Part shown: positions 17,338 through 34,322 of the stretch, piece by piece
Numbering within the stretch: the stretch's first letter is position 1
Layout: the number at the start of each line of letters is the position of its first letter
Virus record (IMG/VR): IMGVR_UViG_3300042549_005931
Coordinates: 186,001-250,000 of that record
DNA length: 64,000 nucleotides
Direction: 5' to 3' (one strand)
The notes under the pieces: model-generated
The model's input: only the letters and a program-made list of their open reading frames with translations
The model's database searches: none
What the model was told of the DNA's origin: nothing
Translations under genes and position numbers: made by a program

Positions 17338-17368
17338 TTGATTTTGTCAATACTTATATATACATTTG
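17338..17368 (+). promoter_or_regulatory. Bacteroidota-type promoter for leader 1/tRNA array 1
   Basis: TTG at 17338-17340 and TACATTTG (TAnnTTTG -7 element) at 17361-17368. Confidence 0.65.
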
Positions 17369-17556: not shown

Positions 17557-17626
17557 GGGCCGGATGTCAATGGCTGACCATCTGATTTGCAATCAGAATG
17601 AAAGGGTTCGATTCCCTACGTGTCCA
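17557..17626 (+). tRNA. tRNA-Ala(TGC)
   Basis: TCTGA-TTTGCAA-TCAGA anticodon arm, G3-U70, bulged acceptor stem. Confidence 0.8.
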
Positions 17627-17659
17627 CAGTATTAGTTCTTTGAAATCGTGGGTAAAATT

Positions 17660-17732
17660 GTCTATGTGGCGCAACGGTTAGCGCTCCGACCTGATACGTC
17701 GGCGGTTGGTGGTTCGAATCCATCCATAGACA
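17660..17732 (+). tRNA. tRNA-Ile(GAT)
   Basis: cloverleaf, loop CTGATAC. Confidence 0.92.
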
Positions 17733-17737
17733 CATTT

Positions 17738-17810
17738 GGAGACGTAGCTCAGTTGGTAGAGCACCGGCCTGAAGAGCCGGGTGTCGGTGGTTCAAATCCA
17801 CCCGTCTCCA
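17738..17810 (+). tRNA. tRNA-Phe(GAA)
   Basis: cloverleaf, loop CTGAAGA. Confidence 0.95.
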
Positions 17811-17816
17811 CATTTT

Positions 17817-17890
17817 GACCTCTTAGCTCAGTTGGTTAGAGCACCTCACTTTTAATGAGGGAGTCCCGCGTTCGAGTCGCGGAGGGGTCA
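17817..17890 (+). tRNA. tRNA-Lys(TTT)
   Basis: cloverleaf, loop CTTTTAA. Confidence 0.95.
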
Positions 17891-17895
17891 CACAC

Positions 17896-17967
17896 GCGTC
17901 TATGGTGTAATTGGCAGCATACCGGTCTCCAAAACCGGCGGTCGAGAATCGTTGTCTCGTGGACGTG
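17896..17967 (+). tRNA. tRNA-Trp(CCA)
   Basis: loop CTCCAAA; atypical T-loop ATCGTTG. Confidence 0.85.
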
Positions 17968-17972
17968 CAAAT

Positions 17973-18044
17973 AGTTCTATGGTGTAATGGATAGCACCTG
18001 ACACTACGGATGTCAAAGTTGGAGTTCGAGTCTCTATGGAACTA
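17973..18044 (+). tRNA. tRNA-Arg(ACG)
   Basis: cloverleaf, loop CTACGGA. Confidence 0.92.
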
Positions 18045-18052
18045 CGTTAAAA

Positions 18053-18127
18053 GGTGAATTGGCTGAGTGGTCAAAAGCAACGGTCTGCAAAACCGTACAA
18101 TCGTTGGTTCAAATCCAACATTCACCT
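18053..18127 (+). tRNA. tRNA-Cys(GCA)
   Basis: cloverleaf, loop CTGCAAA, U73. Confidence 0.92.
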
Positions 18128-18128
18128 C

Positions 18129-18203
18129 GGTGACTGTCGTCTAATGGTAGGACAAAGGTTTGTGGTGCCTTCAATAAGAGTTCGATTCTCTTCAGTCACA
18201 CCA
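18129..18203 (+). tRNA. tRNA-His(GTG)
   Basis: loop TTGTGGT, encoded G-1 and CCA. Confidence 0.9.
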
Positions 18204-18208
18204 TATAT

Positions 18209-18276
18209 TGCGGGGAGGAGGGTTCCCAACCAGTCTCATAAGCTGTGTTTTCCGGTTTCGACTACCGGCCCCGCAA
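18209..18276 (+). tRNA. tRNA-Met(CAT), atypical
   Basis: TGCGGGG/CCCCGCA acceptor, loop CTCATAA, shortened D-arm. Confidence 0.7.
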
Positions 18277-18340
18277 CAAAATATTTTAGATTTTTTTTAC
18301 ATATATTTTTTTATTTAAAAAACTTCTTTTATATTTGTCA

Positions 18341-18477
18341 TAAGATAATGGTTTTCACCATTCAACGGATGTCGACAATCCAGAGTGGAACCTGAAAACA
18401 TAACCCTCTGCCGAGCGCTCATAAAACTGAAGAAGCAGTCAAGAATGGAACGAAACGGGTATTCCATCATTATCTTA
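18341..18477 (+). ncRNA. unidentified structured RNA
   Basis: 12-bp closing stem TAAGATAATGGT/ATCATTATCTTA, internal stems, TATATTTG promoter just upstream. Confidence 0.55.
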
Positions 18478-18480
18478 CAG

Positions 18481-18554
18481 GCTCCCTTAGCTCAGTTGGC
18501 CGGAGCGCCTCACTTGTAATGAGGATGTCGGCGGTTCGAATCCGTCAGGGAGCT
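18481..18554 (+). tRNA. tRNA-Thr(TGT)
   Basis: cloverleaf, loop CTTGTAA. Confidence 0.95.
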
Positions 18555-18560
18555 CAACAA

Positions 18561-18701
18561 GGTTCTATAGTTGTTTAGGTCGCCCCTTAAACAATGAGTG
18601 GGTTAATGATGGTTTAGTATTACTACCCGATATTCTAGATGAAGCGTGGTAAGTGATTAAACAAGTAATTAACGAGATGGGTTCGATTCCCATTAGAGCC
18701 T
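18561..18701 (+). ncRNA. tRNA-like RNA (acceptor + T-arm, expanded interior)
   Basis: GGTTCTA/TAGAGCC acceptor, ATGGG-TTCGATT-CCCAT T-arm, no canonical anticodon arm. Confidence 0.6.
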
Positions 18702-18750
18702 CAAAACATAGGATTAATTACCCTATGTATGGATGGTTCGAAACATCCGA

Positions 18751-18824
18751 TTGATTATGGTGTAATGGTGCACGGAGACCGTAATTGGAGCTCAGGATTA
18801 AGGTTCAAGTCCTTTTTAATCAGC
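18751..18824 (+). pseudogene. degenerate tRNA
   Basis: TTGATTA/TAATCAG acceptor, TGGTGTAATGG D-arm, GGTTCAAGTCC T-arm, broken anticodon arm. Confidence 0.5.
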
Positions 18825-18829
18825 AACAA

Positions 18830-19215
18830 GTGACGACTGTGGTGTAACCCCACGGTATATGAAATCCAAAATGGTCCTGTTGAAGCCGGAATAGTCATAC
18901 AGGTCAGGAGAGAGTTAGTATAAGTTGGGAGTAATTAACCAATTGACGAAAACTAATCACCAAGAAATTGGTCATGATGTCCAACGGGGATAATAAACTT
19001 GTTAATTTGTTAATTTAAGTTCTGGTGGGTTTTATTAAATAATTTTGTTTCATTTTAAACAATTTTAGTTATAAGGAAGTTGAAGAATTGTAACCACCAA
19101 CATAGAAATTAGATTAACAAAGTTTAATTACGGGAGGTGTCTCGTATAACTAATACAATCCCCTAATAGGGACTGATGTAAGATTAAGATTCTTACGACA
19201 CCGAACGTGATTGGA
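18830..19215 (+). ncRNA. unidentified ~390-nt structured RNA
   Basis: nested long-range stems, no ORF. Confidence 0.45.
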
Positions 19216-19224
19216 TTATTAACC

Positions 19225-19299
19225 GCCCCTATCGACAAGCGGTTAAGTCACGTCCCTTTCACGGATGAGTCACGGGTTCGATTCCCGTTGGGGGTACCA
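19225..19299 (+). tRNA. tRNA-Glu(TTC)
   Basis: cloverleaf, loop CTTTCAC, CCA encoded. Confidence 0.95.
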
Positions 19300-19310
19300 A
19301 AAGTTTTATT

Positions 19311-19559
19311 ATGTTAGAACAAATATTGGAGTACTTTGGGGAAGAAGAATTTCTTAAAGCGGACGGATTCGATGAAGCCGTTATTGGTGTTGAAGAAAGT
19401 TCGATGAGACTAATCTATTCAGTTACCAAATGTCTTGAGATATTGGTTACCAATGAAGAGATGTCATTAGAAGAAGCTATTGAGTATTTTGACTTTAATG
19501 TTAGAAGTGCTTATGTAGGTGATAAAACACCCATTTGGTGTGAGGATGGTTTTATGTAA
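19311..19559 (+). CDS. hypothetical phage protein
   Basis: ADGFDEAVIG...EAIEYFDFNV...AYVG motif typical of large phages. Confidence 0.7.
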   Translation: MLEQILEYFGEEEFLKADGFDEAVIGVEESSMRLIYSVTKCLEILVTNEEMSLEEAIEYFDFNVRSAYVGDKTPIWCEDGFM

Positions 19560-19560
19560 T

Positions 19561-19749
19561 ATGAAAAAAATAATATATCTACTAATTGTAATTTTTACAT
19601 TATCCGGTTGTTTTACTTATGTAAGAGAAACTGGTAGATTTTACCCACGTAATAGAAATTTACAACCAAACCATAGAATGGGTATTAACGGTTACCATTT
19701 AAGAAATCAATATTATTTTAGACATATTCAACCATTAAAAAAAAGATAA
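19561..19749 (+). CDS. small lipoprotein
   Basis: MKKIIYLLIVIFTLSGC lipobox from ATG 19561. Confidence 0.6.
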   Translation: MKKIIYLLIVIFTLSGCFTYVRETGRFYPRNRNLQPNHRMGINGYHLRNQYYFRHIQPLKKR

Positions 19750-19791
19750 AGGATTGATTTTCAACATTTTTATATTTATAATAAAAAAGAT

Positions 19792-20139
19792 ATGTTAGAC
19801 TTAAAAGAACTTTTAATTATGCTAGGATTGGCGGTTGGTGGACCATCACACAGTCAAGATATGACTTTTTATCGACAAAAATTATCTAATGAAATGGTTT
19901 TAGAACAAAAACTAAAAGAAGAAATTAAAGCCTTAGAATATAGAAAACTTTGGGACGATGTAAATCAAAAAGAAAATGCAGATTTTGCAGTTAGGTGGTT
20001 TAAAGATAAAAAATCGGAAGATAAATTAGGTAGTTCAAAAAAAGATTTAAATAACACAAGAAAAAAAATAAAAGTATTAAAAAATATCCTTGAAAAAGAT
20101 TCATTAGATAAGGTAGTACCTCAAACTCAGGTACTTTAA
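19792..20139 (+). CDS. hypothetical coiled-coil protein
   Basis: ORF preceded by TATTTATA. Confidence 0.6.
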   Translation: MLDLKELLIMLGLAVGGPSHSQDMTFYRQKLSNEMVLEQKLKEEIKALEYRKLWDDVNQKENADFAVRWFKDKKSEDKLGSSKKDLNNTRKKIKVLKNILEKDSLDKVVPQTQVL

Positions 20140-20178
20140 TTTATTTTCGGATATTTATATATTATAAAAACAAAAATT

Positions 20179-20601
20179 ATGAAAAAATTATTATTTATTT
20201 TCGCGTTAGTTCTTGGTTGTACTTTTAGTTCAACTGCTCAAGAATTGTTTGGTTCCGCAACTAACAAAGGTATGGACGGATACTTAACTGGTGGTTACAT
20301 CAAAAAAGGATGGGGTGCCTATGTTGGTTTTAGATATGATGCTGACCCTATGGTTAGTACTAAAACAGGTAGCTTTGATAAAACTATGAAATTTGGTGTT
20401 ATTCGTATGTTTGCGAGTGAGAAAATTATGATGGGTGTGGGAATCCAACCTGTCGATAATGTTAACAAACCAAATGTTTTTATTGGTTACGCACCATTAA
20501 AATCGGAAGGATTGAAGATATGGGTTATTGGTAATTTAGTAGGTTCTAATTTTACACCAGGTCTTGGTTTAACTTATAAATTATCACAAATTAATTTTTA
20601 A
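20179..20601 (+). CDS. small outer-membrane beta-barrel-like protein
   Basis: signal peptide, Gly/aromatic beta strands, terminal Phe. Confidence 0.55.
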   Translation: MKKLLFIFALVLGCTFSSTAQELFGSATNKGMDGYLTGGYIKKGWGAYVGFRYDADPMVSTKTGSFDKTMKFGVIRMFASEKIMMGVGIQPVDNVNKPNVFIGYAPLKSEGLKIWVIGNLVGSNFTPGLGLTYKLSQINF

Positions 20602-20627
20602 AAATTTACTATTAAATAAAACTTTTG

Positions 20628-20635
20628 TATATTTG
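20628..20635 (+). promoter_or_regulatory. Bacteroidota-type -7 promoter element for leader 2
   Basis: TATATTTG 18 nt before leader ATG. Confidence 0.6.
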
Positions 20636-20653
20636 TATATACTTATTAGAAAA

Positions 20654-20758
20654 ATGAAGAATTTATTAACAACAATATCGCTTAGTTTGAACCCGTCATA
20701 TAATGATAATGGGAGAGGCGTGCAGACGTTAATAAGTTCGGACCAAATATTAGGATAG
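20654..20758 (+). CDS. attenuator leader peptide 2 (MKNLLTTISLSLNPSYNDNGRGVQTLISSDQILG)
   Basis: 34-codon ORF; codons match tRNA array 2; ends GGA TAG TAA like leader 1. Confidence 0.8.
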   Translation: MKNLLTTISLSLNPSYNDNGRGVQTLISSDQILG

Positions 20759-20781
20759 TAAATAAAAAAACTAAAATAAAG

Positions 20782-20822
20782 AAACCCGAACGACTTAAAA
20801 AATTGTTCGGGTTTTTTGTTTT
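20782..20822 (+). terminator. attenuator terminator before tRNA array 2
   Basis: AAACCCGAACGA/TTGTTCGGGTTT + T tract; 5' arm complementary to GTTCGG at 20736-20741. Confidence 0.85.
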
Positions 20823-20902
20823 AATGAAACTTTTACATATATTTGTAAAACAGTTCATCACATAGGTGGTGAAAAATGTTCTTTGACATTGTGAGAAAAA
20901 AT

Positions 20903-20987
20903 GCTCGGGTGGTGTAATGGTAGCCACGAAGGACTTAAAATCCTTTGGACAGAAATGTCCGTGCCGGTTCGAGTCCGGCCCCGAGTA
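20903..20987 (+). tRNA. tRNA-Leu(TAA)
   Basis: type II cloverleaf, loop CTTAAAA. Confidence 0.95.
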
Positions 20988-20989
20988 CA

Positions 20990-21099
20990 AATGTAATGAC
21001 TTAGAAATAAGTGACGGAACAGACGCTATGTATGAAATGGAAACTTTCGAAACTCGTATAAAAGAGTGAATTAGACACAAACCGTACAGACATTACATT
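20990..21099 (+). ncRNA. unidentified structured RNA between tRNAs
   Basis: AATGTAATG/CATTACATT closing stem, ACTTA-GAAA-TAAGT hairpin, ACGG/CCGT. Confidence 0.5.
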
Positions 21100-21104
21100 A
21101 AATT

Positions 21105-21178
21105 GGTTCCGTAGCTCAGCTGGATAGAGCAACTCTCTTCTAAAGAGTAGGTCTTTGGTTCGAATCCAAACGGAATCA
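21105..21178 (+). tRNA. tRNA-Arg(TCT)
   Basis: cloverleaf, loop CTTCTAA. Confidence 0.95.
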
Positions 21179-21183
21179 CATAT

Positions 21184-21258
21184 AGAGTAATGGGCTAATT
21201 GGTAAGCCGCTACATTTGGGTTGTAGACATCATGGGGGTTCGAGTCCCTCTTATTCTA
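21184..21258 (+). tRNA. tRNA-Pro(TGG)
   Basis: cloverleaf, loop TTTGGGT. Confidence 0.88.
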
Positions 21259-21266
21259 CATTAAAT

Positions 21267-21351
21267 GGTTTCGTTGCCGTAGTGGCCGAACGGTCCAGAC
21301 TGTTAATCTGGTGAGTAACATCCATCGTAGGTTCGAATCCTACCGAGACCG
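21267..21351 (+). tRNA. tRNA-Asn(GTT) with long variable arm
   Basis: loop CTGTTAA, G73, ~15-nt variable region. Confidence 0.85.
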
Positions 21352-21403
21352 CTTGACTTTTTCGAATATTTTATGTATTTATTGTTAACTAAAAAAATTA
21401 ATA

Positions 21404-21943
21404 ATGGGTAAGTACTTCGAAAAAATTATAGATTTAAGAAATCAAGGAAAAACATATAAGGAAATATGTGTTGAATTAAACTGTGCAATGTCAACAGTGT
21501 CATATCACTGTAAGTTAAATAAATTGGGTGGCCACACTGATAGACTGACAGATGAAGATAAGGTAGAACTTCAAAAATTATACAATGAAGTTGGCAGTTT
21601 AAAAAAAGTGGCTAAATTAAAAGGTTATGCATTTCAAACTGTTCAAAAATATGTAACAATAAAAAATAGAACAAAAAAAGTTTCAAAATCCGAAGCGGTA
21701 ATAGAATGGAGAAAAAGAACTAAGATAAAATTAGTTGAATATAAAGGTGGTAAATGTCAAATTTGTGATTACAATAAATCATTCAATGCATTACATTTCC
21801 ATCATATTAACCCAAATGAAAAAGATTTTTCAATATCAGGTAAATCATTATCATTTGACAAATTAAAAACTGAGGTTGATAAATGTATTTTAGTATGTTC
21901 AAATTGTCATTCTGAAATACATGAAGGTTTAATAACATTATAA
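21404..21943 (+). CDS. HTH + HNH homing-endonuclease-like protein
   Basis: CQIC...FHHINP...C.LVCSNCHSEIH; N-terminal HTH motifs. Confidence 0.85.
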   Translation: MGKYFEKIIDLRNQGKTYKEICVELNCAMSTVSYHCKLNKLGGHTDRLTDEDKVELQKLYNEVGSLKKVAKLKGYAFQTVQKYVTIKNRTKKVSKSEAVIEWRKRTKIKLVEYKGGKCQICDYNKSFNALHFHHINPNEKDFSISGKSLSFDKLKTEVDKCILVCSNCHSEIHEGLITL

Positions 21944-21944
21944 C

Positions 21945-22020
21945 ACCCTTATGGACAAACGGCAAAGTCACTGGTTTTAGGCACCAGGTTTTATAGGTTC
22001 GAATCCTATTAGGGGTACCA
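21945..22020 (+). tRNA. tRNA-Leu(TAG) with short variable loop
   Basis: loop TTTAGGC, 5-nt variable loop, CCA encoded. Confidence 0.85.
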
Positions 22021-22037
22021 ACTAAATTTTTAATATT

Positions 22038-22157
22038 ATGGCAGTTACATCAAAAAGAGTTGCAAAGAAAGCTAGTAAAGCTTTAAGTAGTAAAAAAACG
22101 AGTAAAACAACTAAGACTCTTGCAGGTAGTGCATTGAGACAAAGAAGAAAAAAATAG
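22038..22157 (+). CDS. small basic protein (MAVTSKRVAKKASKALSSKKTSKTTKTLAGSALRQRRKK)
   Basis: 39-aa ORF between tRNAs; not in ORF track. Confidence 0.7.
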   Translation: MAVTSKRVAKKASKALSSKKTSKTTKTLAGSALRQRRKK

Positions 22158-22162
22158 TAATT

Positions 22163-22245
22163 GGGAGTGTTGAGCAACGGTTGCTTAGCAGACTGTAAAT
22201 CTGTGGTCTACGACATTGGCGGTTCGAATCCGTCCACTCCCACCA
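22163..22245 (+). tRNA. tRNA-Tyr(GTA)
   Basis: type II, loop CTGTAAA, CCA encoded. Confidence 0.92.
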
Positions 22246-22258
22246 AAACAAAAAAACT

Positions 22259-22819
22259 ATGGAATTCATTTACAGAAGAGAAAACGTATTATCAAAAGAA
22301 CAATGTGATGAGATAATACAAAAGTTTGAAGAGTCTGATTTTAAATTGGCAGGTATTACCGCATCAGGTGTTAACGAATCTATTAAAAAATCTACAGACC
22401 TTACATTTCATCATAATACTTTAGATGATGAAAAAATTAATAATCTTTGGGGTGATACTGTTCGTAAAATTGTTCGTGATTTAAATTATCACATGAACAA
22501 ATACAAGGAGGAAAATGAATACTTGAAATTTTTTAAAATAGAGATGGATTCATTCAACATTCAAAAGTACGAACCAAATGGTGGATTTTATACTTGGCAT
22601 TGTGAAACCATTCATTGTTTAGATAGAGTTACCGCTTGGATGATATATCTTAATGATGTTGATGATGGTGGTACTGAGTTTATGAAACAAAAACACACGG
22701 AGAAAGCTGAAGCGGGTAAGTTAATTATATGGCCAGCAGATTGGACACATGCACATCGAGGTCAGGTTAGCACTACCAAAACAAAATATATTTTAACAGG
22801 TTGGTTTAGTCAAAAGTAA
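22259..22819 (+). CDS. 2OG-Fe(II) oxygenase (prolyl-hydroxylase-like)
   Basis: WHCE, YLNDVDDGGTEF, THAHRG, KYILTGW. Confidence 0.85.
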   Translation: MEFIYRRENVLSKEQCDEIIQKFEESDFKLAGITASGVNESIKKSTDLTFHHNTLDDEKINNLWGDTVRKIVRDLNYHMNKYKEENEYLKFFKIEMDSFNIQKYEPNGGFYTWHCETIHCLDRVTAWMIYLNDVDDGGTEFMKQKHTEKAEAGKLIIWPADWTHAHRGQVSTTKTKYILTGWFSQK

Positions 22820-22820
22820 T

Positions 22821-23387
22821 ATGGAATTCATTTATAGAAAAGAAAATGCATTATCATTAGATTTATGTAATGATATAATTACTAAATTTAATGAATCTAA
22901 TTTACCTGAACCGGGTGTAGTAGGAAAAGGTGTAGTTGAAGAAATAAAAAAATCGATAGATTTATCTTTCCATGCCGATTCATTAAACACTAAAGAATTA
23001 CAAGATATATGGGGTCCACCATTGGGTGAAAGTATTCCAATTATTAATTCATGTGTTCAAGAATATTGTGATAAATTTGAATATTTGAAAATGATGAGTT
23101 CATTTAAAATGGAAGCTTTTAATATTCAAAAGTATGAACCGGGTGGTGGATTTTATACTTGGCATTGTGAAGCTACTTTAAAAATAAGACGTGTTGTTGT
23201 TTGGATGGTTTATTTAAACGATGTTGACGATGGAGGAACCGAATTTATACATCAAAACCATATCGAAAAAGCGGAAGCTGGTAAATTATTGTTGTGGCCG
23301 GTTGATTGGACACATGCACATAGAGGACAAATTAGTTATACCAAAACAAAATATATTTTAACAGGTTGGTATTCTATACCCCAATAA
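22821..23387 (+). CDS. 2OG-Fe(II) oxygenase, tandem paralog
   Basis: same motifs, high identity to previous gene. Confidence 0.85.
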   Translation: MEFIYRKENALSLDLCNDIITKFNESNLPEPGVVGKGVVEEIKKSIDLSFHADSLNTKELQDIWGPPLGESIPIINSCVQEYCDKFEYLKMMSSFKMEAFNIQKYEPGGGFYTWHCEATLKIRRVVVWMVYLNDVDDGGTEFIHQNHIEKAEAGKLLLWPVDWTHAHRGQISYTKTKYILTGWYSIPQ

Positions 23388-23434
23388 TCGTTGAAATATA
23401 CGATAACAGATTTTATCGTTAGATTAAACGATAT

Positions 23435-23508
23435 GGACTTATAGCTCAGATGGTTAGAGCAGGTCGCTCATAACGACAAGGTCACAGGTTCGAGCCCTGT
23501 TTGGTCCA
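23435..23508 (+). tRNA. tRNA-Ile2(CAT, lysidine type; reads ATA)
   Basis: loop CTCATAA; GGACTTATAGCTCAG body resembles Ile2 rather than Met. Confidence 0.75.
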
Positions 23509-23588
23509 CAAAAAGTGTCTTGGTATGCTCTGACGAAAGTCAACGACAAGGTCTCGGTAGGCAGAACGCGTCTGATTCTACCCAAAAC

Positions 23589-23662
23589 AGAAGATTAGCT
23601 CAGTTGGTTAGAGCATTTGGTTTACATCCAAAGGGTCATAGGTTCGAATCCTATATCTTCTA
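23589..23662 (+). tRNA. tRNA-Val(TAC)
   Basis: cloverleaf, loop TTTACAT. Confidence 0.92.
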
Positions 23663-23729
23663 CAGAAAACTGAGATAGGATATTATTGATATGGATACAA
23701 TTCCTGATAATATTGCTACTCAGTTGATT

Positions 23730-23805
23730 GCGAAAGTAGCTCAGTTGGTAGAGCATTACCTTGCCAAGGTAAGGGTCGCGAGTTCGAATCTCGTTTTTCG
23801 CTCCA
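23730..23805 (+). tRNA. tRNA-Gly(GCC)
   Basis: cloverleaf, loop TTGCCAA, CCA encoded. Confidence 0.95.
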
Positions 23806-23919
23806 TAAGGAGCTCCCGCTTTAAGGTGAAGGACACGCGGGCGAATAACTTTCAGGGTAAGTTGTAAAAGAACTCGAAACCTTAAGTCTAGTGTGGGAGA
23901 GACTCCTACCCACACACAA

Positions 23920-23991
23920 GCGAATATAGCACAGCGGTTAGTGCTCTGGTCTTCCAAACCGGAAACGACAGTTCGAATCTGTCTATTCGCT
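23920..23991 (+). tRNA. tRNA-Gly(TCC)
   Basis: cloverleaf, loop CTTCCAA. Confidence 0.93.
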
Positions 23992-24000
23992 CTATTAATC

Positions 24001-24073
24001 GGGATTGAGGTCAAACGGTTAAGATGTCGCCCTGTCACGGCGCACGGAGCGGGTTCAACTCCCGTCAGTCCCG
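24001..24073 (+). tRNA. tRNA-Asp(GTC)
   Basis: cloverleaf, loop CTGTCAC. Confidence 0.9.
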
Positions 24074-24076
24074 CAT

Positions 24077-24147
24077 TCCTCTATGGTGTAACGGTAACAC
24101 AACTGTTTTTGGTGCAGTTATTCATGGTTCGAATCCATGTAGGGGGT
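24077..24147 (+). tRNA. tRNA-Gln(TTG)
   Basis: cloverleaf, loop TTTTGGT. Confidence 0.92.
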
Positions 24148-24150
24148 CAA

Positions 24151-24347
24151 TGAGTAAGAGATACTCAGCAGTCTTTAATCCAAGACTCATTTAAAAATGG
24201 ATAGGATAATAGACTGGACATCCTTAAACGCCAGTCTCTTGGGAATAAAGCTGGAAAATCGTCCTTGCTCCCAGTAACGATTGACTTTTTAATGAGGGAT
24301 GCCTCGCAGGTTTTTCAAACAGCTAAATAACCGAAATAACTACTCAC
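24151..24347 (+). ncRNA. unidentified ~200-nt structured RNA
   Basis: TGAGTA/TACTCA ends, GACTGG/CCAGTC hairpin, potential pseudoknot AATCGT/ACGATT. Confidence 0.55.
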
Positions 24348-24372
24348 ATATAATCTCAATGTGGGGAAACAA

Positions 24373-24454
24373 GGAGAGGTGGACAATGGTCGTTGAGCGG
24401 TCTTGAAAACCGTCGGGTGTAAAAGCTTTGCAGGTTCGAATCCTGTCCTCTCCG
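24373..24454 (+). tRNA. tRNA-Ser(TGA)
   Basis: type II, loop CTTGAAA. Confidence 0.9.
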
Positions 24455-24511
24455 CACCCTACAATCCCATGTCGGCTCGAGTGGGTGAGAGTATAGGTAT
24501 CGGGCCCTTAT

Positions 24512-24600
24512 AGAGGGTTGGGTGAGTGGCTTAAACCAGCAGTTTGCTAAACTGCGGATGGGGTTAAACCTGTCCACCGGTTCGAATCCGGTATCCTCTA
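24512..24600 (+). tRNA. tRNA-Ser(GCT)
   Basis: type II, loop TTGCTAA. Confidence 0.93.
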
Positions 24601-24614
24601 CACTATTTATATGA

Positions 24615-25866: not shown

Positions 25867-26328
25867 ATGAAACAATTCAAAACCCTCCATGGTAAACCGA
25901 TACCAGAGGTTGTAGAGTACATCAAGGATTACATCTCAACAAGAGAGAATGTTCAAATTCTCATCGGTTCCGACTCACAATGTTATGCTAACACAAAGAC
26001 CGTTTACGGTGTTGTTATTGCTCTTTACACTTCCGGTAAAGGTGCACATGTATTGTGTACACGTGAGACGGTTCCTATGGAGAGGAATATGAATCTTCGT
26101 TTAATGACTGAAGTTTGGAAGTCTATTGAACTTGCAGAATATCTTAGAGAAAACGGTATTCAAAAAGCCGACTTTATTGATATTGATTTAAACCCTGATA
26201 GAAAATACAAATCAAACAGTTCTTTAAGACAAGCAATTGGTTTTGTTGAGGGTATGGGTTATCAAGCAAGATGGAAACACGAAGGTGCAATTATAACATA
26301 TGCCGCTAATCATTTAGTAAGATTATGA
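25867..26328 (+). CDS. RNase H-like YkuK (DUF458) family protein
   Basis: IGSDSQ...RLMTEVWKS...IDLNP motifs. Confidence 0.75.
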   Translation: MKQFKTLHGKPIPEVVEYIKDYISTRENVQILIGSDSQCYANTKTVYGVVIALYTSGKGAHVLCTRETVPMERNMNLRLMTEVWKSIELAEYLRENGIQKADFIDIDLNPDRKYKSNSSLRQAIGFVEGMGYQARWKHEGAIITYAANHLVRL

Positions 26329-26527: not shown

Positions 26528-26737
26528 ATGAAATGTATCAAAAGTAAAGACGGTGAGATTCGTCGAGTGTCAGATGTAGATGCTGACAACAAAGTTAAAG
26601 TACATGGATGGAAGTTTGTACCGAAGTCTGAATGGAAATTAAACGTAAGAGGTTCGGTAAATGTTAAACAAAACGCACCGAAAGAAAAGAAAGAAAAAGT
26701 AGTTAGTGAGTACAAAGAAAAAAAATCAAAAAAATAA
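26528..26737 (+). CDS. small basic hypothetical protein
   Basis: IRRVSD...GWKFVPKSEWK. Confidence 0.65.
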   Translation: MKCIKSKDGEIRRVSDVDADNKVKVHGWKFVPKSEWKLNVRGSVNVKQNAPKEKKEKVVSEYKEKKSKK

Positions 26738-26835
26738 TTTAATATATTTTGTTTTTTAAATTTTTTTTCGTAAGTTTGTAAAAGAAATCACAACGGTGGT
26801 TTTTTAAAAGAGAAAGTTCTTTGAATTAAAGATAT

Positions 26836-27603
26836 CGGCGGTCTATAGTCGTTAAATAAACTACGAAAGTAGGATAAAGTGAATCGAAAGTTATAAACGG
26901 TTTGCGGTTTCGGTAACGGAACTCGAGTAGACAAGCAAGACATCATCTGTCCTTAGTTCCGAGGGTAACACTGTAGGAAATGGATAGGTGACTTGGCAAT
27001 CTGAGTTGTCAAGTTGAGGTGGGAACACTAATAAGAGTAACTTGTGGAACTTTACAAGAAATGGGACCTCCAATCTCACTATTGTGTTGTTCAATATCAT
27101 GGGTACCTTAAAATCGAAAGGTATGGTGAAGTACGAGTGGTGTCGTTATCATCCTTAATAAAACCCTACCAAGAGTTTTATTTTGAAGGTGTCCAAAAGT
27201 ATGGAGGTTGGGAGACTTCAGAGAGTAGTTTAGTATTCTGTTGTTCAAAAGATAATGGAGCTGGCAGACGGGCCACTACTTTCAAGATTCGGAAACAAAA
27301 AACCCTTACAATGGTGTAAATCAAAAAAAAGGAAAAGTGCTCGTCAGTCGTTGGAAACAGGTGACTACATAGTCGTGAGATGTTCACGGCCATAGAAGAC
27401 CCCAAGTCCGATATGATTTTTGAGAAAAGTTCTATATAGTGCGGCGGTATTGTATAGAGAAGAGTAACGAGAGAGTATTCAACGACTTAAGGATTGGTTA
27501 ATCTAATTGACCGTCACTGATTGGTACAGTTCAAAAGACTGTGGATAAGAGAAGAATCAATAATGTCTCTAAAGTCAATCACAAAATGGTGTAATCTCAG
27601 CCA
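26836..27603 (+). ncRNA. giant structured ncRNA, GOLLD-like
   Basis: ~770-nt purine-rich non-coding tract with many hairpins, own TAAGTTTG promoter and boxA-like site, near tRNA arrays of a phage. Confidence 0.6.
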
Positions 27604-27736
27604 AATTAAAAAGACATTTTTAGGTTTCTTGGAACCATAATAATCCAAGTGGTGGAATTAACCTTAATCGGTTGGCCCTTAGGGATGGAGAAATCTATCC
27701 CTTTTTTTATTCATTTATTTTATTTATATTTGTTTT

Positions 27737-28483
27737 ATGAGAATCGTTTGTATTTCTGACACCCATGACCTTCATCAAAAGATGACACATAAGTTACCGA
27801 AAGGTGATGTGTTAATCCATGCGGGTGATGTTAGTAATATTGGAGAACAACCCGATGTAACACGATTTATTCATTGGTTCATGAATATTGAAGGATATGA
27901 TTCTAAAATATTTATTGCCGGTAATCACGACTTTGCATTTGAGAGAATTAATGAACCACACCATAAAGGTGATTTTGAATGGTTATCTAATTTAATCAAT
28001 GAAGAAAATCTATCTCAATCTAATGTAACATATTTGGAAGATAATTTCATTACCATTGAAAGTCCTGAATTCTCAAGACCAATTAAGATTTATGGTAGTC
28101 CTTGGCAACCTGAATTTTATAATTGGGCATTTAACTTACCACGTGGTGGTGATGATATGTTTGAGAAATGGAATATGATACCCGATGATACAGATGTATT
28201 AATCACACACGGACCGGCAGAGAATGTTAGGGACTTTGTTCCTAATGGTCAAATCGTTGGTTGTGGTATGTTAAGACATCGTATTGAAACAATTAGACCG
28301 GCATTACATGTATGTGGTCACATACATTACGCATACGGTGTGTCTTTAGTTAATAGTATTATGTATGTGAATGCGGCAATATGTGATGAAAGATATTCAC
28401 CATCAAATAAACCTATTGTCATTGACCTAAAAGAAGTTGATGGCGAGATTTTAGCTTACTTAGTAGAAGATGAATCCAATTAG
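27737..28483 (+). CDS. metallophosphoesterase
   Basis: SDTH, HAGD, AGNHD, THGP, GHIH motifs. Confidence 0.9.
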   Translation: MRIVCISDTHDLHQKMTHKLPKGDVLIHAGDVSNIGEQPDVTRFIHWFMNIEGYDSKIFIAGNHDFAFERINEPHHKGDFEWLSNLINEENLSQSNVTYLEDNFITIESPEFSRPIKIYGSPWQPEFYNWAFNLPRGGDDMFEKWNMIPDDTDVLITHGPAENVRDFVPNGQIVGCGMLRHRIETIRPALHVCGHIHYAYGVSLVNSIMYVNAAICDERYSPSNKPIVIDLKEVDGEILAYLVEDESN

Positions 28484-29135
28484 TGTAGTTATCTCAACAA
28501 GAGAAATTGATAATGATTATTTGAAACATGTTAGTAAGGTGTTTTCACATCCTAAAACTGAAATCATTATTTACGAAAACCAAGGTGATTTTTCGTTACC
28601 TGAATTGTATAATAAGGGATTAAAGGATTCAAAAAATGAGGTTGTTGTGTTCATGCACGATGACCTCATCATTGAAACACCTAATTTAACCCCCAAAATC
28701 TTACGACTGTTCAACGATAATCCTGAGTATGGTATAATCGGTGTTGCCGGTACTGATAATCTCCTGAGTGGAATGTGGTGGCAAGATAGAGAATCTATGC
28801 AAGGTCAAGTCGGTCATGAACATGAAGGAAGAAAACATACCAACAAATACTCCGGTACATTTGGTGAAAACTTAAAAGAAGTTGTTGTAATTGATGGTTT
28901 GTTTATGTGTATTCATAAGGAGAGAATTAAACATAACTTCAACGAACAATTTGAAGGATTTCACTTCTACGATTTACCAATCTGTTTGGAGAATTATCTT
29001 GACGGAGTAAAAATTGGTGTAACAACCAAAATTAAATTAACACATAAGTCAATTGGTGTTACAAATAAAAAGTGGGAGAAAAATAAGTTGTTATTTGAAG
29101 CTCTATATGAGAAGAAATTACCAATTAAGATTTAA
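28470..29135 (+). CDS. glycosyltransferase (GT2-like)
   Basis: YNKGL, FMHDD, IDGLF, FHFYD motifs. Confidence 0.75.
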   Translation: MNPISVVISTREIDNDYLKHVSKVFSHPKTEIIIYENQGDFSLPELYNKGLKDSKNEVVVFMHDDLIIETPNLTPKILRLFNDNPEYGIIGVAGTDNLLSGMWWQDRESMQGQVGHEHEGRKHTNKYSGTFGENLKEVVVIDGLFMCIHKERIKHNFNEQFEGFHFYDLPICLENYLDGVKIGVTTKIKLTHKSIGVTNKKWEKNKLLFEALYEKKLPIKI

Positions 29136-29468: not shown

Positions 29469-29870
29469 GGGGATGACCGGCATTTGACTGGCGTTTGTAT
29501 TGTAAGTGGGCACGTAGTCAGACTTCATCTATGACTTAAATAAACGGTGGAAACTTTTAGACGGCAACGTTTACAAAAACATGGAAATTGCGGGTATTCT
29601 TGCAACTTCTAACGTAGCAGTAGCCTAAGGCAAACCTACAACGGGTCGACTGACATATAACCTAGGAACAGAAGTCTTCAAAGTGTGATACCACTCAGAG
29701 TGTCAAAGGTCTCGTTCAGAGTGCTACCTTAAGTGAACTCGACACAGTTATTGGTAACGATGTCAAAATAGGAACCAATTATTTGTCTATTGAGAACTAA
29801 TAGAATAAACGTGTAGTCCATTTATTATTCGGCGGACAGGACCAGGGTTCGAATCCCTGCATCTCCACCA
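29469..29870 (+). ncRNA. ssrA: tmRNA
   Basis: GGGGATGA...GAC 5' end, GGTTCGAATCCC...CTCCACCA 3' end, tag ORF GNVYKNMEIAGILATSNVAVA* at 29563-29628. Confidence 0.93.
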
Positions 29871-33673: not shown

Positions 33674-33746
33674 AGTTAATAAATATCGACAAATCTCTTT
33701 GTGGTTTATATAAAATATGTAATTTTGTAAAAAATATAAACATAAC

Positions 33747-34322
33747 ATGAAAAAATTACTGTTATTTTCATCATTATTACTATCAGGATGTCAAGTATAT
33801 GAGTTTCCAAACGAGACACCGAGGTTGACAGGAGGTAAATGGGTATTATCAAACTACGATATTGTTGTAATTAATTCAATATCTAATGTTACTGTTATTA
33901 AAAACGATACTGTTTGTATCAACGCATTTAATGGGCAGAGTTATGTTAGTGGAAATGTTTTGATGAAACAATTTTATAACCAAACGGCAAAAGACAGAAG
34001 ATTTGTAATTGGTAAAACAACTTGGGAATTTGACAGTAACAGTAATCACTTATATTGTGATTTTATGGATAAAAATGGTTCATTAATGCCTACACATAAT
34101 CCATATTGGGTTAACATGTCAGGATATACAAGAAATATATCAATAAGTAATGTTGAAAATGGTGGTGTAACAAATTATACGTTTGAAACAAACACTGTTG
34201 GTGTAAACCCACCTAAAATATTAAAATTATTGAGTCCCGAAATTGTAACTGATTTATATGTTGATGGTGGTAAAAGAGATAAGGGTGTGACAGTTAGAAT
34301 ACTATTAACCTTTATGAGATAA
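33747..34322 (+). CDS. lipoprotein
   Basis: LLSGC lipobox. Confidence 0.7.
   Translation: MKKLLLFSSLLLSGCQVYEFPNETPRLTGGKWVLSNYDIVVINSISNVTVIKNDTVCINAFNGQSYVSGNVLMKQFYNQTAKDRRFVIGKTTWEFDSNSNHLYCDFMDKNGSLMPTHNPYWVNMSGYTRNISISNVENGGVTNYTFETNTVGVNPPKILKLLSPEIVTDLYVDGGKRDKGVTVRILLTFMR

What the first reader, a model, noticed from the sequence alone, without database searches (positions are those of the whole stretch)
26836..27603. Giant (~770 nt) ornate non-coding RNA, probably GOLLD class
Long ORF-poor, more GC/purine-rich tract with many short hairpins (e.g. CTTGGCAAT/GTTGTCAAG, TACCTT/AAGGTA, CAGT-TCAAAAG-ACTG), its own promoter and boxA-like site, and a terminator near 27680-27708. Size and tRNA-array/phage context fit GOLLD RNAs, whose function is unknown.
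Basis: inference. Interest (0 to 1): 0.65.

Follow-up and report, generated by a model that had tools for sequence, protein, structure and literature searches.

The report
GOLLD RNA gene in jumbo phage
The tract is a full-length gene for GOLLD RNA, a giant phage non-coding RNA known to self-assemble into a hollow RNA cage, and here it sits behind a promoter and leader that copy those of bacterial ribosomal RNA operons.

Summary
Window 27221-27603 (+) matches Rfam GOLLD (RF02032) over the whole model at 280 bits (cut-off 150). The upstream half (26837-27220) is homologous to the 5' domain of GOLLD env-38, the RNA solved by cryo-EM as a 14-mer cage.

- **Relatives:** 75 loci align across the full ~780 nt where their contig reaches that far. 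Both halves show strong compensatory base-pair changes.
- **Setting:** a 269-kb freshwater phage record, between a ~24-gene tRNA array and a phage tmRNA gene.
- **Terminator:** real, at 27681-27702.

Two things go beyond a routine new member.

1. The "boxA-like site" is real and conserved. An exact GTTCTTTGAA lies 21-111 nt upstream of GOLLD in 66 of 70 relatives. A TAnnTTTG promoter box and a covarying AACG/AAAG-loop hairpin precede it. The same motif sits in the leaders of Bacteroidota rRNA operons. I found no paper linking GOLLD and boxA.
2. This clade lacks hairpin P21a, one of the loops that join the two cage halves.

Function remains inferred.

The parts
26748..26778 (+). Candidate promoter of Bacteroidetes type: TTTG (26748-26751), 19 nt, TAAGTTTG (26771-26778). 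The inferred start is near 26785.
   Evidence: Pattern match. TAnnTTTG sits at a fixed distance upstream of boxA in 36 of 38 distinct GOLLD upstream contexts, against 0 in the reverse-complement control. The same 13-mer TAnnTTTGTAAAA precedes the tRNA array, the tRNA-Leu sub-array, the tmRNA and one protein gene. Function as a promoter is inferred.
26787..26800 (+). boxB-like leader hairpin AUCAC-AACG-GUGGU, extendable to 26783-26804.
   Evidence: 19 of 36 distinct relatives have a perfect hairpin of 5 bp or more here, always with an AACG or AAAG loop and with 7 different stems. Shuffled controls give 11.5%. Comparable hairpins precede boxA in Bacteroidota rRNA leaders.
26816..26825 (+). boxA-like element GTTCTTTGAA, 21 nt before the GOLLD 5' end.
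   Evidence: An exact copy lies 21-111 nt upstream on the same strand in 66 of 70 relatives. It matches 10 of 11 positions of the functional consensus GYTCTTTAANA. GTTCTTTGA lies upstream of 16S in 29 of 67 Bacteroidota rRNA operons, against 0 in the control. The whole 269-kb genome holds only 3 exact copies.
26837..27220 (+). GOLLD 5' domain (the 'cap' domain in the env-38 structure), including the GAAA tetraloop hairpin at 27113-27122.
   Evidence: Sequence homology to the env-38 construct, read by eye. 105 consensus pairs with 97.7% of cells paired (slid controls 35-42%), and 71 pairs with changes on both sides (slid controls 15-27).
27221..27603 (+). GOLLD 3' domain (the 'ring' domain), equal to the whole Rfam RF02032 model. 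It holds P13/P14 with the conserved CAAAA loop (27246-27250), the linker, and helices through to the last hairpin (27587-27603).
   Evidence: Rfam hit of 280.4 bits, model positions 1-416 of 416. 78 consensus pairs with 98.9% of cells paired and 49 with double changes.
27284..27335 (+). A-rich variable linker (J13/15), about 52 nt with no embedded tRNA, closed by helix 27267-27277 / 27336-27345.
   Evidence: This is the poorly conserved stretch of the Rfam alignment. The closing helix is 100% paired with 6 covarying pairs. It corresponds to env-38 pairs 467-471 / 555-559 in the published covariation table.
27432..27457 (+). P21 region reduced to one unbranched 11-bp hairpin with a GGCG loop. 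The first branch hairpin (P21a, carrying kissing loop L21a) is absent.
   Evidence: Gap at Rfam model positions ~233-246. A 16-column gap is shared only by the window and its 4 near-identical kin among 49 sequences. The assignment to P21a rests on pair 653:661 enclosing nucleotides 656-657.
27604..27680 (+). Non-conserved 3' trailer between the GOLLD core and the terminator.
   Evidence: In most relatives a T-run follows the last hairpin directly. The trailer matches no RNA family (best E 0.86), and its fold is no better than shuffles, z = -1.04.
27681..27710 (+). Intrinsic terminator: a 9-bp stem with a 4-nt loop, then a T-run.
   Evidence: Terminator scan and fold.
20815..20887 (+). Paralogous leader in front of tRNA-Leu (20903): TTTG..TATATTTG, hairpin CAUCAC-AUAG-GUGGUG (20856-20871), and boxA-like GTTCTTTGAC (20878-20887).
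17557..24601 (+). Phage tRNA array (22 genes by ARAGORN, 25 Rfam hits), with an exact boxA 10-mer at 17635-17644 just before tRNA-Ile.
29469..29870 (+). Phage tmRNA gene, 1.9 kb downstream of GOLLD, with TACATTTG 13 nt before its 5' end.
   Evidence: A tmRNA lies within 3 kb downstream of GOLLD in 28 of the 47 relatives that have enough flank.

Best explanation
Window ~26837-27603 (+) is the gene for a full-length GOLLD RNA of the env-38 type, carried by a freshwater jumbo phage.

**Shown here**
- Family membership by covariance model.
- Homology of both domains to GOLLD.
- A covariation-supported fold.
- No conserved ORF.
- A terminator downstream.
- A conserved upstream leader: a TAnnTTTG box, an AACG/AAAG-loop hairpin, then GTTCTTTGAA.

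**Inferred**
- Transcription starts near 26785 from a host-type (Bacteroidota-like) promoter.
- The nascent boxB-boxA leader recruits the host NusB/S10 antitermination complex, as in rRNA operons. This lets the ~925-nt untranslated, highly structured transcript escape Rho and fold as it is made.
- Transcription stops at 27702-27710.

**By homology to env-38 (PDB 9MEE)**
- The RNA folds into a 5' cap domain and a 3' ring domain, with the A-rich linker facing inwards.
- Copies assemble without protein into a closed dihedral cage.
- Because this clade lacks P21a/L21a, one of three contacts joining the half-shells, the equatorial seam should be weaker or the copy number different from 14.

**Most likely role (inferred, low confidence)**
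A stable-RNA component of the phage's translation-takeover island (tRNAs, tmRNA, GOLLD) that holds or scaffolds translation-related cargo during lytic growth.
For: - **Model hit:** Rfam GOLLD at 280.4 bits over the full model, against a cut-off of 150. It is the only copy in the 269-kb virus record.
- **Relatives:** 75 loci align, 71 of them over window ~26817/26854 to 27599-27602 at 67-99% identity; four are cut short by a contig end. Seven checked by Rfam score 165-323 bits.
- **Fold:** 186 consensus pairs, 120 with compensatory changes. Both halves far exceed the slid-partner controls.
- **env-38:** the construct sequence matches the window from its first to its last nucleotide. Its structure is a 14-mer cage with D7 symmetry, with bridges B8 (L21a), B9 (L21b) and B10 joining the halves.
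- **Leader:** boxA is present in 66 of 70 relatives. The promoter box is present in 36 of 38 contexts. The hairpin shows covariation. The same motif and layout occur in Bacteroidota rRNA leaders.
- **Context:** tRNA array, tmRNA and a terminator.
- **RNA runs:** six freshwater metatranscriptome runs from five studies hold 36-43% of the sampled words of the stretch.
Against: - RNA runs can carry DNA, so one search is only suggestive.
- Cage formation, copy number and Nus-factor binding are extrapolated, not tested.
- The window-wide count of the full promoter pattern is not significantly above shuffles (6 against 2.75).
- The boxA leader is not universal to GOLLD. Caulobacter phage phiCbK has none within 3 kb.
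- The host is unknown.
- The biological function of any GOLLD RNA is unknown.
Confidence: 0.88

Rival explanations
1. The RNA is a GOLLD but does not form the closed 14-mer. Without P21a/L21a it assembles with a different copy number, or only as open half-shells.
For: P21a is absent in the window clade. L21a forms one of only three bridges between half-shells. GOLLD stoichiometry is known to change with such elements: S. agalactiae GOLLD lacks P21b and other helices and forms decamers.
Against: The P21b-like loop (GGCG, with its GC invariant) is kept, and the rest of the 3' domain aligns to the model over its full length. B10 was not located in the window. The 5' cap domain, which sets the ring size in env-38, is well conserved.
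Confidence: 0.3
2. GTTCTTTGAA is not a Nus-factor boxA. It is instead part of a phage promoter or an RNA-processing signal shared by the phage's stable-RNA genes.
For: It lies only 16-21 nt before the mature 5' ends of tRNA-Ile, tRNA-Leu and GOLLD in the window. No binding or antitermination data exist.
Against: Its distance to GOLLD varies from 21 to 111 nt, while its distance to the upstream TAnnTTTG box is fixed. The identical motif sits in Bacteroidota rRNA leaders behind the same kind of promoter and hairpin. It matches the functional boxA consensus at 10 of 11 positions.
Confidence: 0.2
3. The tract is a long cis-acting 5' leader of the downstream metallophosphoesterase gene (27737-28483) rather than an independent RNA gene.
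For: Same strand, and only 134 nt from the end of the GOLLD core to the ATG.
Against: A strong terminator lies between them. In relatives GOLLD is followed by a T-run, by a tRNA-Met 11-18 nt downstream, or by a convergent tmRNA, not by this gene.
Confidence: 0.03
4. The tract encodes one or more small proteins.
For: ORFs of up to 91 aa exist.
Against: The 91-aa frame is open in only 3 of 49 homologues, all near-identical, and the rest carry 1-11 stops. Substitutions follow base-pairing, not codons.
Confidence: 0.01

Closest known systems
GOLLD RNA env-38 (Rfam RF02032; cryo-EM PDB 9MEE; Weinberg 2009, Kretsch 2025)
   Same: Both domains are homologous from the first to the last nucleotide of the construct. 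Shared features are the conserved CAAAA loop of P14, a GAAA loop in the P11 region, the linker-closing helix, a P21b-type loop, the last hairpin GGUGUAAUCUCAGCC, an aquatic metagenomic origin, and tRNA neighbours.
   Different: The window RNA is about 65 nt shorter. P21a/L21a (bridge B8) is missing, so P21 is a single unbranched hairpin. The P11a hairpin is reduced to a 3-bp GAAA stem-loop and the linker is shorter. About 100 nt of extra trailer precede the terminator.
Streptococcus agalactiae GOLLD (decamer; reviewed in PMC12990946)
   Same: Same family. It shows that natural loss of P21 branch hairpins occurs and goes with a different copy number.
   Different: The S. agalactiae RNA lacks P21b, P9, P11a-c and parts of P7 and P10. 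The window RNA lacks P21a and keeps an env-38-like 5' domain.
ROOL RNA
   Same: A large phage or prophage RNA near tRNA islands that forms an RNA-only cage.
   Different: An unrelated sequence and fold. No ROOL match reached threshold in the window.
rRNA-operon antitermination leader (boxB-boxA-boxC; NusB/S10, NusA, NusG, SuhB)
   Same: The order is promoter, hairpin, boxA. The boxA core is the same as in Bacteroidota 16S leaders, and it stands in front of long untranslated structured RNA.
   Different: No boxC was identified. The hairpin loop is strictly AACG or AAAG. The leader is phage-encoded and precedes GOLLD and tRNAs rather than rRNA. Nus binding was not tested.
boxA elements before other untranslated or poorly translated transcripts (suhB 5' UTR, Baniulyte 2017; CRISPR arrays, from my own knowledge of Stringer et al. 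2020)
   Same: boxA is used outside rRNA operons to control Rho-dependent termination on RNA that ribosomes do not protect.
   Different: Those cases are chromosomal and proteobacterial. No GOLLD case was found in the literature searched.

Membership tests
GOLLD RNA (RF02032) | Score at or above the curated gathering threshold of the covariance model, over the full model | tested here: met
   280.4 bits against 150, model positions 1-416 of 416, E = 5.5e-79.
GOLLD RNA (RF02032) | Conserved 3' domain helices (P13-P27) kept as base pairs, with covariation among homologues | tested here: met
   78 consensus pairs, 98.9% of cells paired, 49 with double changes; slid controls give 37-46% and 10-19.
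GOLLD RNA (RF02032) | P21 three-way junction carrying both self-kissing loops L21a and L21b (env-38 type) | tested here: not met
   P21a/L21a is deleted, and a single hairpin with a GGCG loop remains. This element varies within the family, since S. agalactiae GOLLD lacks P21b, so it does not exclude membership.
GOLLD RNA (RF02032) | A less conserved 5' domain of about 400 nt preceding the 3' domain | tested here: met
   26837-27220 is homologous to env-38 residues ~1-420. 105 pairs, 71 with double changes.
GOLLD RNA (RF02032) | Variable single-stranded linker (J13/15) after P13/P14 | tested here: met
   A 52-nt A-rich stretch at 27284-27335, of variable length and sequence in relatives.
GOLLD RNA (RF02032) | Phage or prophage location, usually next to tRNA genes | tested here: met
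   A 269-kb virus record. The tRNA array ends 2.2 kb upstream. 35 of 75 relatives have tRNAs in the stored flank, all on the same strand.
GOLLD RNA (RF02032) | Protein-free assembly into a symmetric multimeric cage | not testable with these tools
   Known for env-38 and S. agalactiae GOLLD. It needs in-vitro transcription with mass photometry or cryo-EM.
GOLLD RNA (RF02032) | Accumulation as a discrete RNA during lytic growth | tested here: inconclusive
   Six metatranscriptome runs hold 36-43% of the sampled words.
rrn-type boxA antitermination leader | Match to the boxA consensus and to boxA of real rRNA operons | tested here: met
   10 of 11 positions match GYTCTTTAANA. GTTCTTTGA lies upstream of 16S in 29 of 67 Bacteroidota operons, control 0.
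rrn-type boxA antitermination leader | Lies in the transcribed leader, downstream of a promoter and a boxB-type hairpin | tested here: met
   TAnnTTTG at a fixed distance in 36 of 38 contexts. A covarying hairpin 2-4 nt upstream of boxA (11 nt in the window clade), present in 19 of 36 contexts. The start site itself is inferred.
rrn-type boxA antitermination leader | Binds NusB-S10 and suppresses Rho-dependent termination | not testable with these tools
   Needs a gel-shift assay and a reporter or ChIP assay in a suitable host.

The most novel reading that the evidence does not exclude
In a large clade of freshwater phages, GOLLD RNA is made as an 'honorary rRNA'. A phage-encoded copy of the host rRNA promoter, boxB hairpin and boxA recruits the Nus antitermination and RNA-chaperone complex. 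That complex is what allows an ~800-nt untranslated RNA to be completed and folded for cage assembly. The invariant AACG/AAAG hairpin loop may add a phage-specific factor. GOLLD, the tRNAs and the tmRNA would then form one co-regulated translation-takeover module. The natural P21a-less variant would show which equatorial bridge of the cage is dispensable.
Probability: 0.45. Interest if true: 0.65.

Novelty: new member of a known kind. Interest (0 to 1): 0.5.

Why it matters
GOLLD is one of the largest bacterial or phage non-coding RNAs. It is now known to build a protein-free cage larger than a ribosome, yet what it does is unknown. This locus offers three useful things.

- **A clean natural example.** It has defined ends, its own terminator, and dozens of relatives diverged enough to give covariation for the 5' domain. 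The published covariation analysis did not cover that domain.
- **A testable handle on how the RNA is made.** The conserved rRNA-like leader points to dependence on host Nus factors. It also places GOLLD with tRNAs and tmRNA in one stable-RNA expression class.
- **A natural deletion of one cage-closing loop.** It can be tested directly for its effect on assembly.

None of this changes the classification. The finding is a known RNA class.

Tried and rejected
- **Read laying:** The tool described this as a filter that also trips by chance. I sent no reference containing those places to any search tool afterwards and worked beside them.
- **Sigma-70 promoter:** the scan's site at 26821-26849 was rejected. 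It is not above shuffles, and its -10 box lies inside the conserved RNA.
- **3' trailer:** I tested whether 27604-27680 is a degenerate tRNA or another known RNA. There was no family match (best E 0.86), and the fold is no better than shuffles.
- **5'-end helix:** a helix between the conserved AAAGATATT and CCAATAT (~27090) is not supported by pair counts, while the RNAalifold alternatives are 48-49 of 49 canonical.
- **RNAalifold errors:** the helix 26837-26839 / 27513-27515 and the small hairpin 27361-27370 are probably wrong. The published table instead pairs the GGUGAC region with GUCAC at ~27512.
- **Promoter enrichment:** the full Bacteroidetes promoter pattern is not significantly enriched window-wide (6 against 2.75).
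- **boxA in a distant GOLLD:** none was found in phiCbK.
- **Literature query:** one search was mis-specified, because 'boxa' matched 'carboxamide', and was wasted.
- **Bridge B7 (L20 with J13/15):** it could not be located without the structure figure.

Full report
**Observation**

The tract is as described.
- A 999-nt gap separates ORF 26528-26737 from ORF 27737-28483. It holds nothing longer than a 91-aa ORF.
- It is richer in G+C (0.38-0.43 against 0.25-0.33) and in purines than its flanks.
- A terminator hairpin with a T-run lies at 27681-27702.
- The window is positions 186001-250000 of a 269,133-bp IMG/VR virus record that CheckV estimates as 81% complete, so this is a jumbo phage.
- Upstream lie 22 tRNA genes by ARAGORN (25 Rfam tRNA hits) at 17557-24601. 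A tmRNA gene lies downstream at 29469-29870.

**Identity**

Rfam's GOLLD model (RF02032) matches 27221-27603 (+) over all 416 positions at 280.4 bits, against a gathering score of 150, with E = 5.5e-79. It is the only copy in the genome. The Rfam model covers what Kretsch et al. (Nature 2025, PMC12286853) call the 3' region: P13/P14, the variable linker, then P15-P27. Their covariation alignment is of this '3end' only.

For the 5' half I collected relatives.
- A conserved 3'-domain motif found 74 IMG/VR contigs.
- One 634,780-bp uncultured phage (LR745206.1) came from GenBank.
- All 75 loci align to the window by blastn. Seventy-one do so over ~26817/26854 to 27599-27602; in the other four (L013, L019, L023, L074) the contig ends inside the RNA.
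- Four are 96-99% identical. The rest are 67-77% identical.
- Seven relatives checked with Rfam score 165-323 bits.

The cryo-EM construct of GOLLD env-38 is printed in the paper's supplement. It begins ATGGCCGCTATGGTCGTCAAATAAATACGAAAGTAGGATAAAGTGG and ends with the GGTGTA(T/A)TCTCAGCC hairpin. These are plainly the same sequences as window 26837 onward and the stretch ending at 27603.

**Structure**

I aligned 49 distinct full-length sequences (A1, 75% mean column identity). RNAalifold gives 186 consensus pairs, and 120 of them have at least one compensatory double change.

| Half | Pairs | Cells paired | Slid-partner control | Pairs with double changes | Control |
|---|---|---|---|---|---|
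| 5' | 105 | 97.7% | 35-42% | 71 | 15-27 |
| 3' | 78 | 98.9% | 37-46% | 49 | 10-19 |

The structure was derived from the same alignment, which inflates the contrast, but the margin is large.

- For the third (TACCTT/AAGGTA), the alignment prefers ACCTT pairing with 27186-27195. That leaves a 3-bp GAAA-tetraloop hairpin at 27113-27122, which is the counterpart of the conserved GAAA loop in env-38's P11 region.
- The longest ORF is open in only 3 of 49 homologues.

**How this copy differs from env-38**

- **P21a is missing.** The window and its four close kin lack a 16-column hairpin (consensus GUCC-CGCAA-GGAC) that the other 44 sequences have. The Rfam alignment shows the same gap at model positions ~233-246.
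- **Why this is P21a.** In the published table, the first hairpin inside P21 is closed by pair 653:661, which encloses nucleotides 656-657. Those are the self-complementary GC/CG dinucleotide of loop L21a, forming bridge B8.
- **What B8 does.** B8, B9 (L21b) and the A-minor contact B10 are the only links between the two seven-membered half-shells.
- **What remains here.** P21 is a single 11-bp hairpin at 27432-27457 with a GGCG loop whose GC is invariant across the alignment.
- **Precedent.** A 2026 review reports that S. agalactiae GOLLD lacks P21b and several 5' helices and forms decamers rather than 14-mers. Loss of P21a plausibly alters the seam or the copy number. That is a prediction, not a result.
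- **Smaller differences.** The linker is short (27284-27335, no tRNA). About 100 nt of non-conserved trailer precede the terminator. That trailer matches no RNA family and does not fold unusually well. Most relatives have a T-run immediately after the last hairpin.

**The leader**

- **Occurrence.** GTTCTTTGAA at 26816-26825 is one of only three exact copies in the 269-kb genome. A second copy stands just before tRNA-Ile at the head of the tRNA array. A one-mismatch copy, GTTCTTTGAC, stands just before tRNA-Leu at 20903.
- **Conservation.** Of the 70 relatives with enough upstream sequence, 66 carry the exact 10-mer on the GOLLD strand, 21-111 nt before the GOLLD 5' end. The extended consensus is CGTTCTTTGAAAA. 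The 747 kb of loci hold only 18 other copies.
- **Match to known boxA.** It matches the functional gamma-proteobacterial consensus GYTCTTTAANA at 10 of 11 positions.
- **Direct test on rRNA operons.** I fetched 80 Bacteroidota 16S 5' ends with their flanks. GTTCTTTGA lies on the sense strand within 450 nt upstream of 16S in 29 of 67 operons, against 0 in the reverse-complement control. It also occurs in 12 of 37 spacer windows.
- **Promoter box.** Upstream of the phage boxA, 36 of 38 distinct contexts carry TAnnTTTG, mostly TAACTTTGTAAAAC. This is the -7 box of Bacteroidetes promoters, an assignment that rests on my own knowledge of that promoter type. It sits at fixed distances, with 0 in the control. 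In the window this is TTTG-N19-TAAGTTTG at 26748-26778.
- **Hairpin.** Between the box and boxA lies a hairpin whose stem covaries through seven versions, while its loop is always AACG or AAAG. In the window it is AUCAC-AACG-GUGGU at 26787-26800.
- **Same layout in hosts.** Bacteroidota rRNA leaders show the same order of box, hairpin and boxA, for example UAUCAG-GAAA-CUGAUA-AAC-GTTCTTTGAG.
- **Paralogue in the window.** A paralogous leader precedes the tRNA-Leu sub-array at 20815-20887.
- **Other copies of the promoter 13-mer.** It also precedes the tRNA array, the tmRNA and a lipoprotein gene. It is therefore a general host-type promoter. The boxA leader was seen only before tRNA genes and GOLLD; the tmRNA has the promoter box but no boxA.

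I read this as a phage copy of the host rRNA antitermination leader. It gives GOLLD its own transcription unit of about 26785-27710. The sequence parallels are shown. Nus binding, antitermination and the start site are inferred.

- No paper in the searchable library contains both 'GOLLD' and 'boxA'.
- The leader is not universal to GOLLD. Caulobacter phage phiCbK has a GOLLD (165 bits) with a tRNA-Gly in its linker, and no such motif occurs within 3 kb.

**Context and function**

- Flanking genes are an RNase H-like protein (25867-26328), a metallophosphoesterase (27737-28483) and a glycosyltransferase (28470-29135).
- tRNA genes lie on the GOLLD strand in 35 of 75 relatives. In seven of them a tRNA-Met starts 11-18 nt after GOLLD.
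- A tmRNA homologue lies within 3 kb downstream in 28 of the 47 loci with enough flank. phiCbK has a permuted tmRNA about 500 nt from its GOLLD.
- DNA runs holding the stretch come from lake, pond, freshwater and wastewater samples. Six freshwater metatranscriptome runs from five studies hold 36-43% of its sampled words. That is compatible with expression but not proof.
I sent none of those letters to any search afterwards.

The function of GOLLD is unknown in the literature. My best guess is a cage that holds or scaffolds translation-related cargo, expressed with the phage's tRNAs and tmRNA. It rests on context and on published speculation.

**Verdict**

This is a new member of a known RNA class, with a natural P21a deletion and a conserved rRNA-like boxB-boxA leader that appears not to have been reported.

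Noticed in passing
window 29469-29870 (+): Phage-encoded tmRNA with an unusual predicted tag, GNVYKNMEIAGILATSNVAVA. A TACATTTG promoter box lies 13 nt before its 5' end, and there is no boxA. A tmRNA lies within 3 kb downstream of GOLLD in 28 of the 47 relatives with enough flank, mostly convergent. phiCbK has a permuted tmRNA beside its GOLLD. The GOLLD-tmRNA linkage seems recurrent.
   Followed up: partly
window 17557-17660 (+): A weak tRNA-like element (Rfam 32.5 bits, not called by ARAGORN) is followed by an exact boxA 10-mer at 17635-17644 and then tRNA-Ile. Here boxA lies between the first two genes of the array, and a TAnnTTTGTAAAA box lies at 17361.
   Followed up: partly
window 20815-20903 (+): A second promoter, hairpin and boxA leader, paralogous to the GOLLD leader, stands in front of tRNA-Leu. 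This suggests the tRNA array is made of several rrn-like transcription units.
   Followed up: partly
window 26827-26836 and A1 columns 14-25: AAAGATATT directly 5' of the GOLLD core is conserved in many relatives, whatever the leader length. A pairing with CCAATAT (~27090) was tested and is not supported. Its role (processing site?) is unexplained.
   Followed up: partly
window 27267-27277 / 27336-27345: A 10-bp, 100%-paired, covarying helix closes the linker. It crosses P13, so it is a pseudoknot relative to the Rfam consensus line. It corresponds to env-38 pairs 467-471 / 555-559, listed as compatible covarying pairs in the published table.
   Followed up: yes
L012, L018, L032, L033, L046, L052, L074; L076: In seven relatives a tRNA-Met gene starts 11-18 nt after the GOLLD 3' end, which implies co-transcription and RNase P processing. 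In the 634-kb phage LR745206.1 a tRNA-Met lies 100 nt upstream, with a GUUACUC-AACG-GAGUAAC hairpin and boxA between it and GOLLD.
   Followed up: partly
L040, L045, L051, L053 (A1 columns 335-350): These relatives carry an extra small hairpin inserted at the GAAA-loop position of the P11 region, where env-38 has its P11a hairpin. The element is variable within the clade.
   Followed up: no
window 33720-34322 (+): The same TAnnTTTGTAAAA box lies 14 nt before the ATG of a 191-aa ORF that starts with a lipoprotein-like signal (MKKLLLFSSLLLSGC). The short untranslated leader without an obvious Shine-Dalgarno sequence fits a Bacteroidota host.
   Followed up: no
window 25867-26328, 27737-28483, 28470-29135 (+): The genes flanking GOLLD encode an RNase H-like protein (PF04308), a calcineurin-like metallophosphoesterase and a family-2 glycosyltransferase. 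The 302-aa and 714-aa neighbours match no Pfam or PHROG family.
   Followed up: partly
L197 (Caulobacter phage phiCbK 103300-106300): The phiCbK GOLLD 3' domain (165 bits) has a tRNA-Gly inside its linker and no boxA-like motif nearby. The rrn-like leader is therefore a clade feature rather than a family feature.
   Followed up: partly
They lie in an AT-rich spacer upstream of ORF 26528-26737, outside the finding.
   Followed up: no
G000:C1:256923-256932 (-), outside the window: The third exact GTTCTTTGAA in the genome. Its context was not examined.
   Followed up: no
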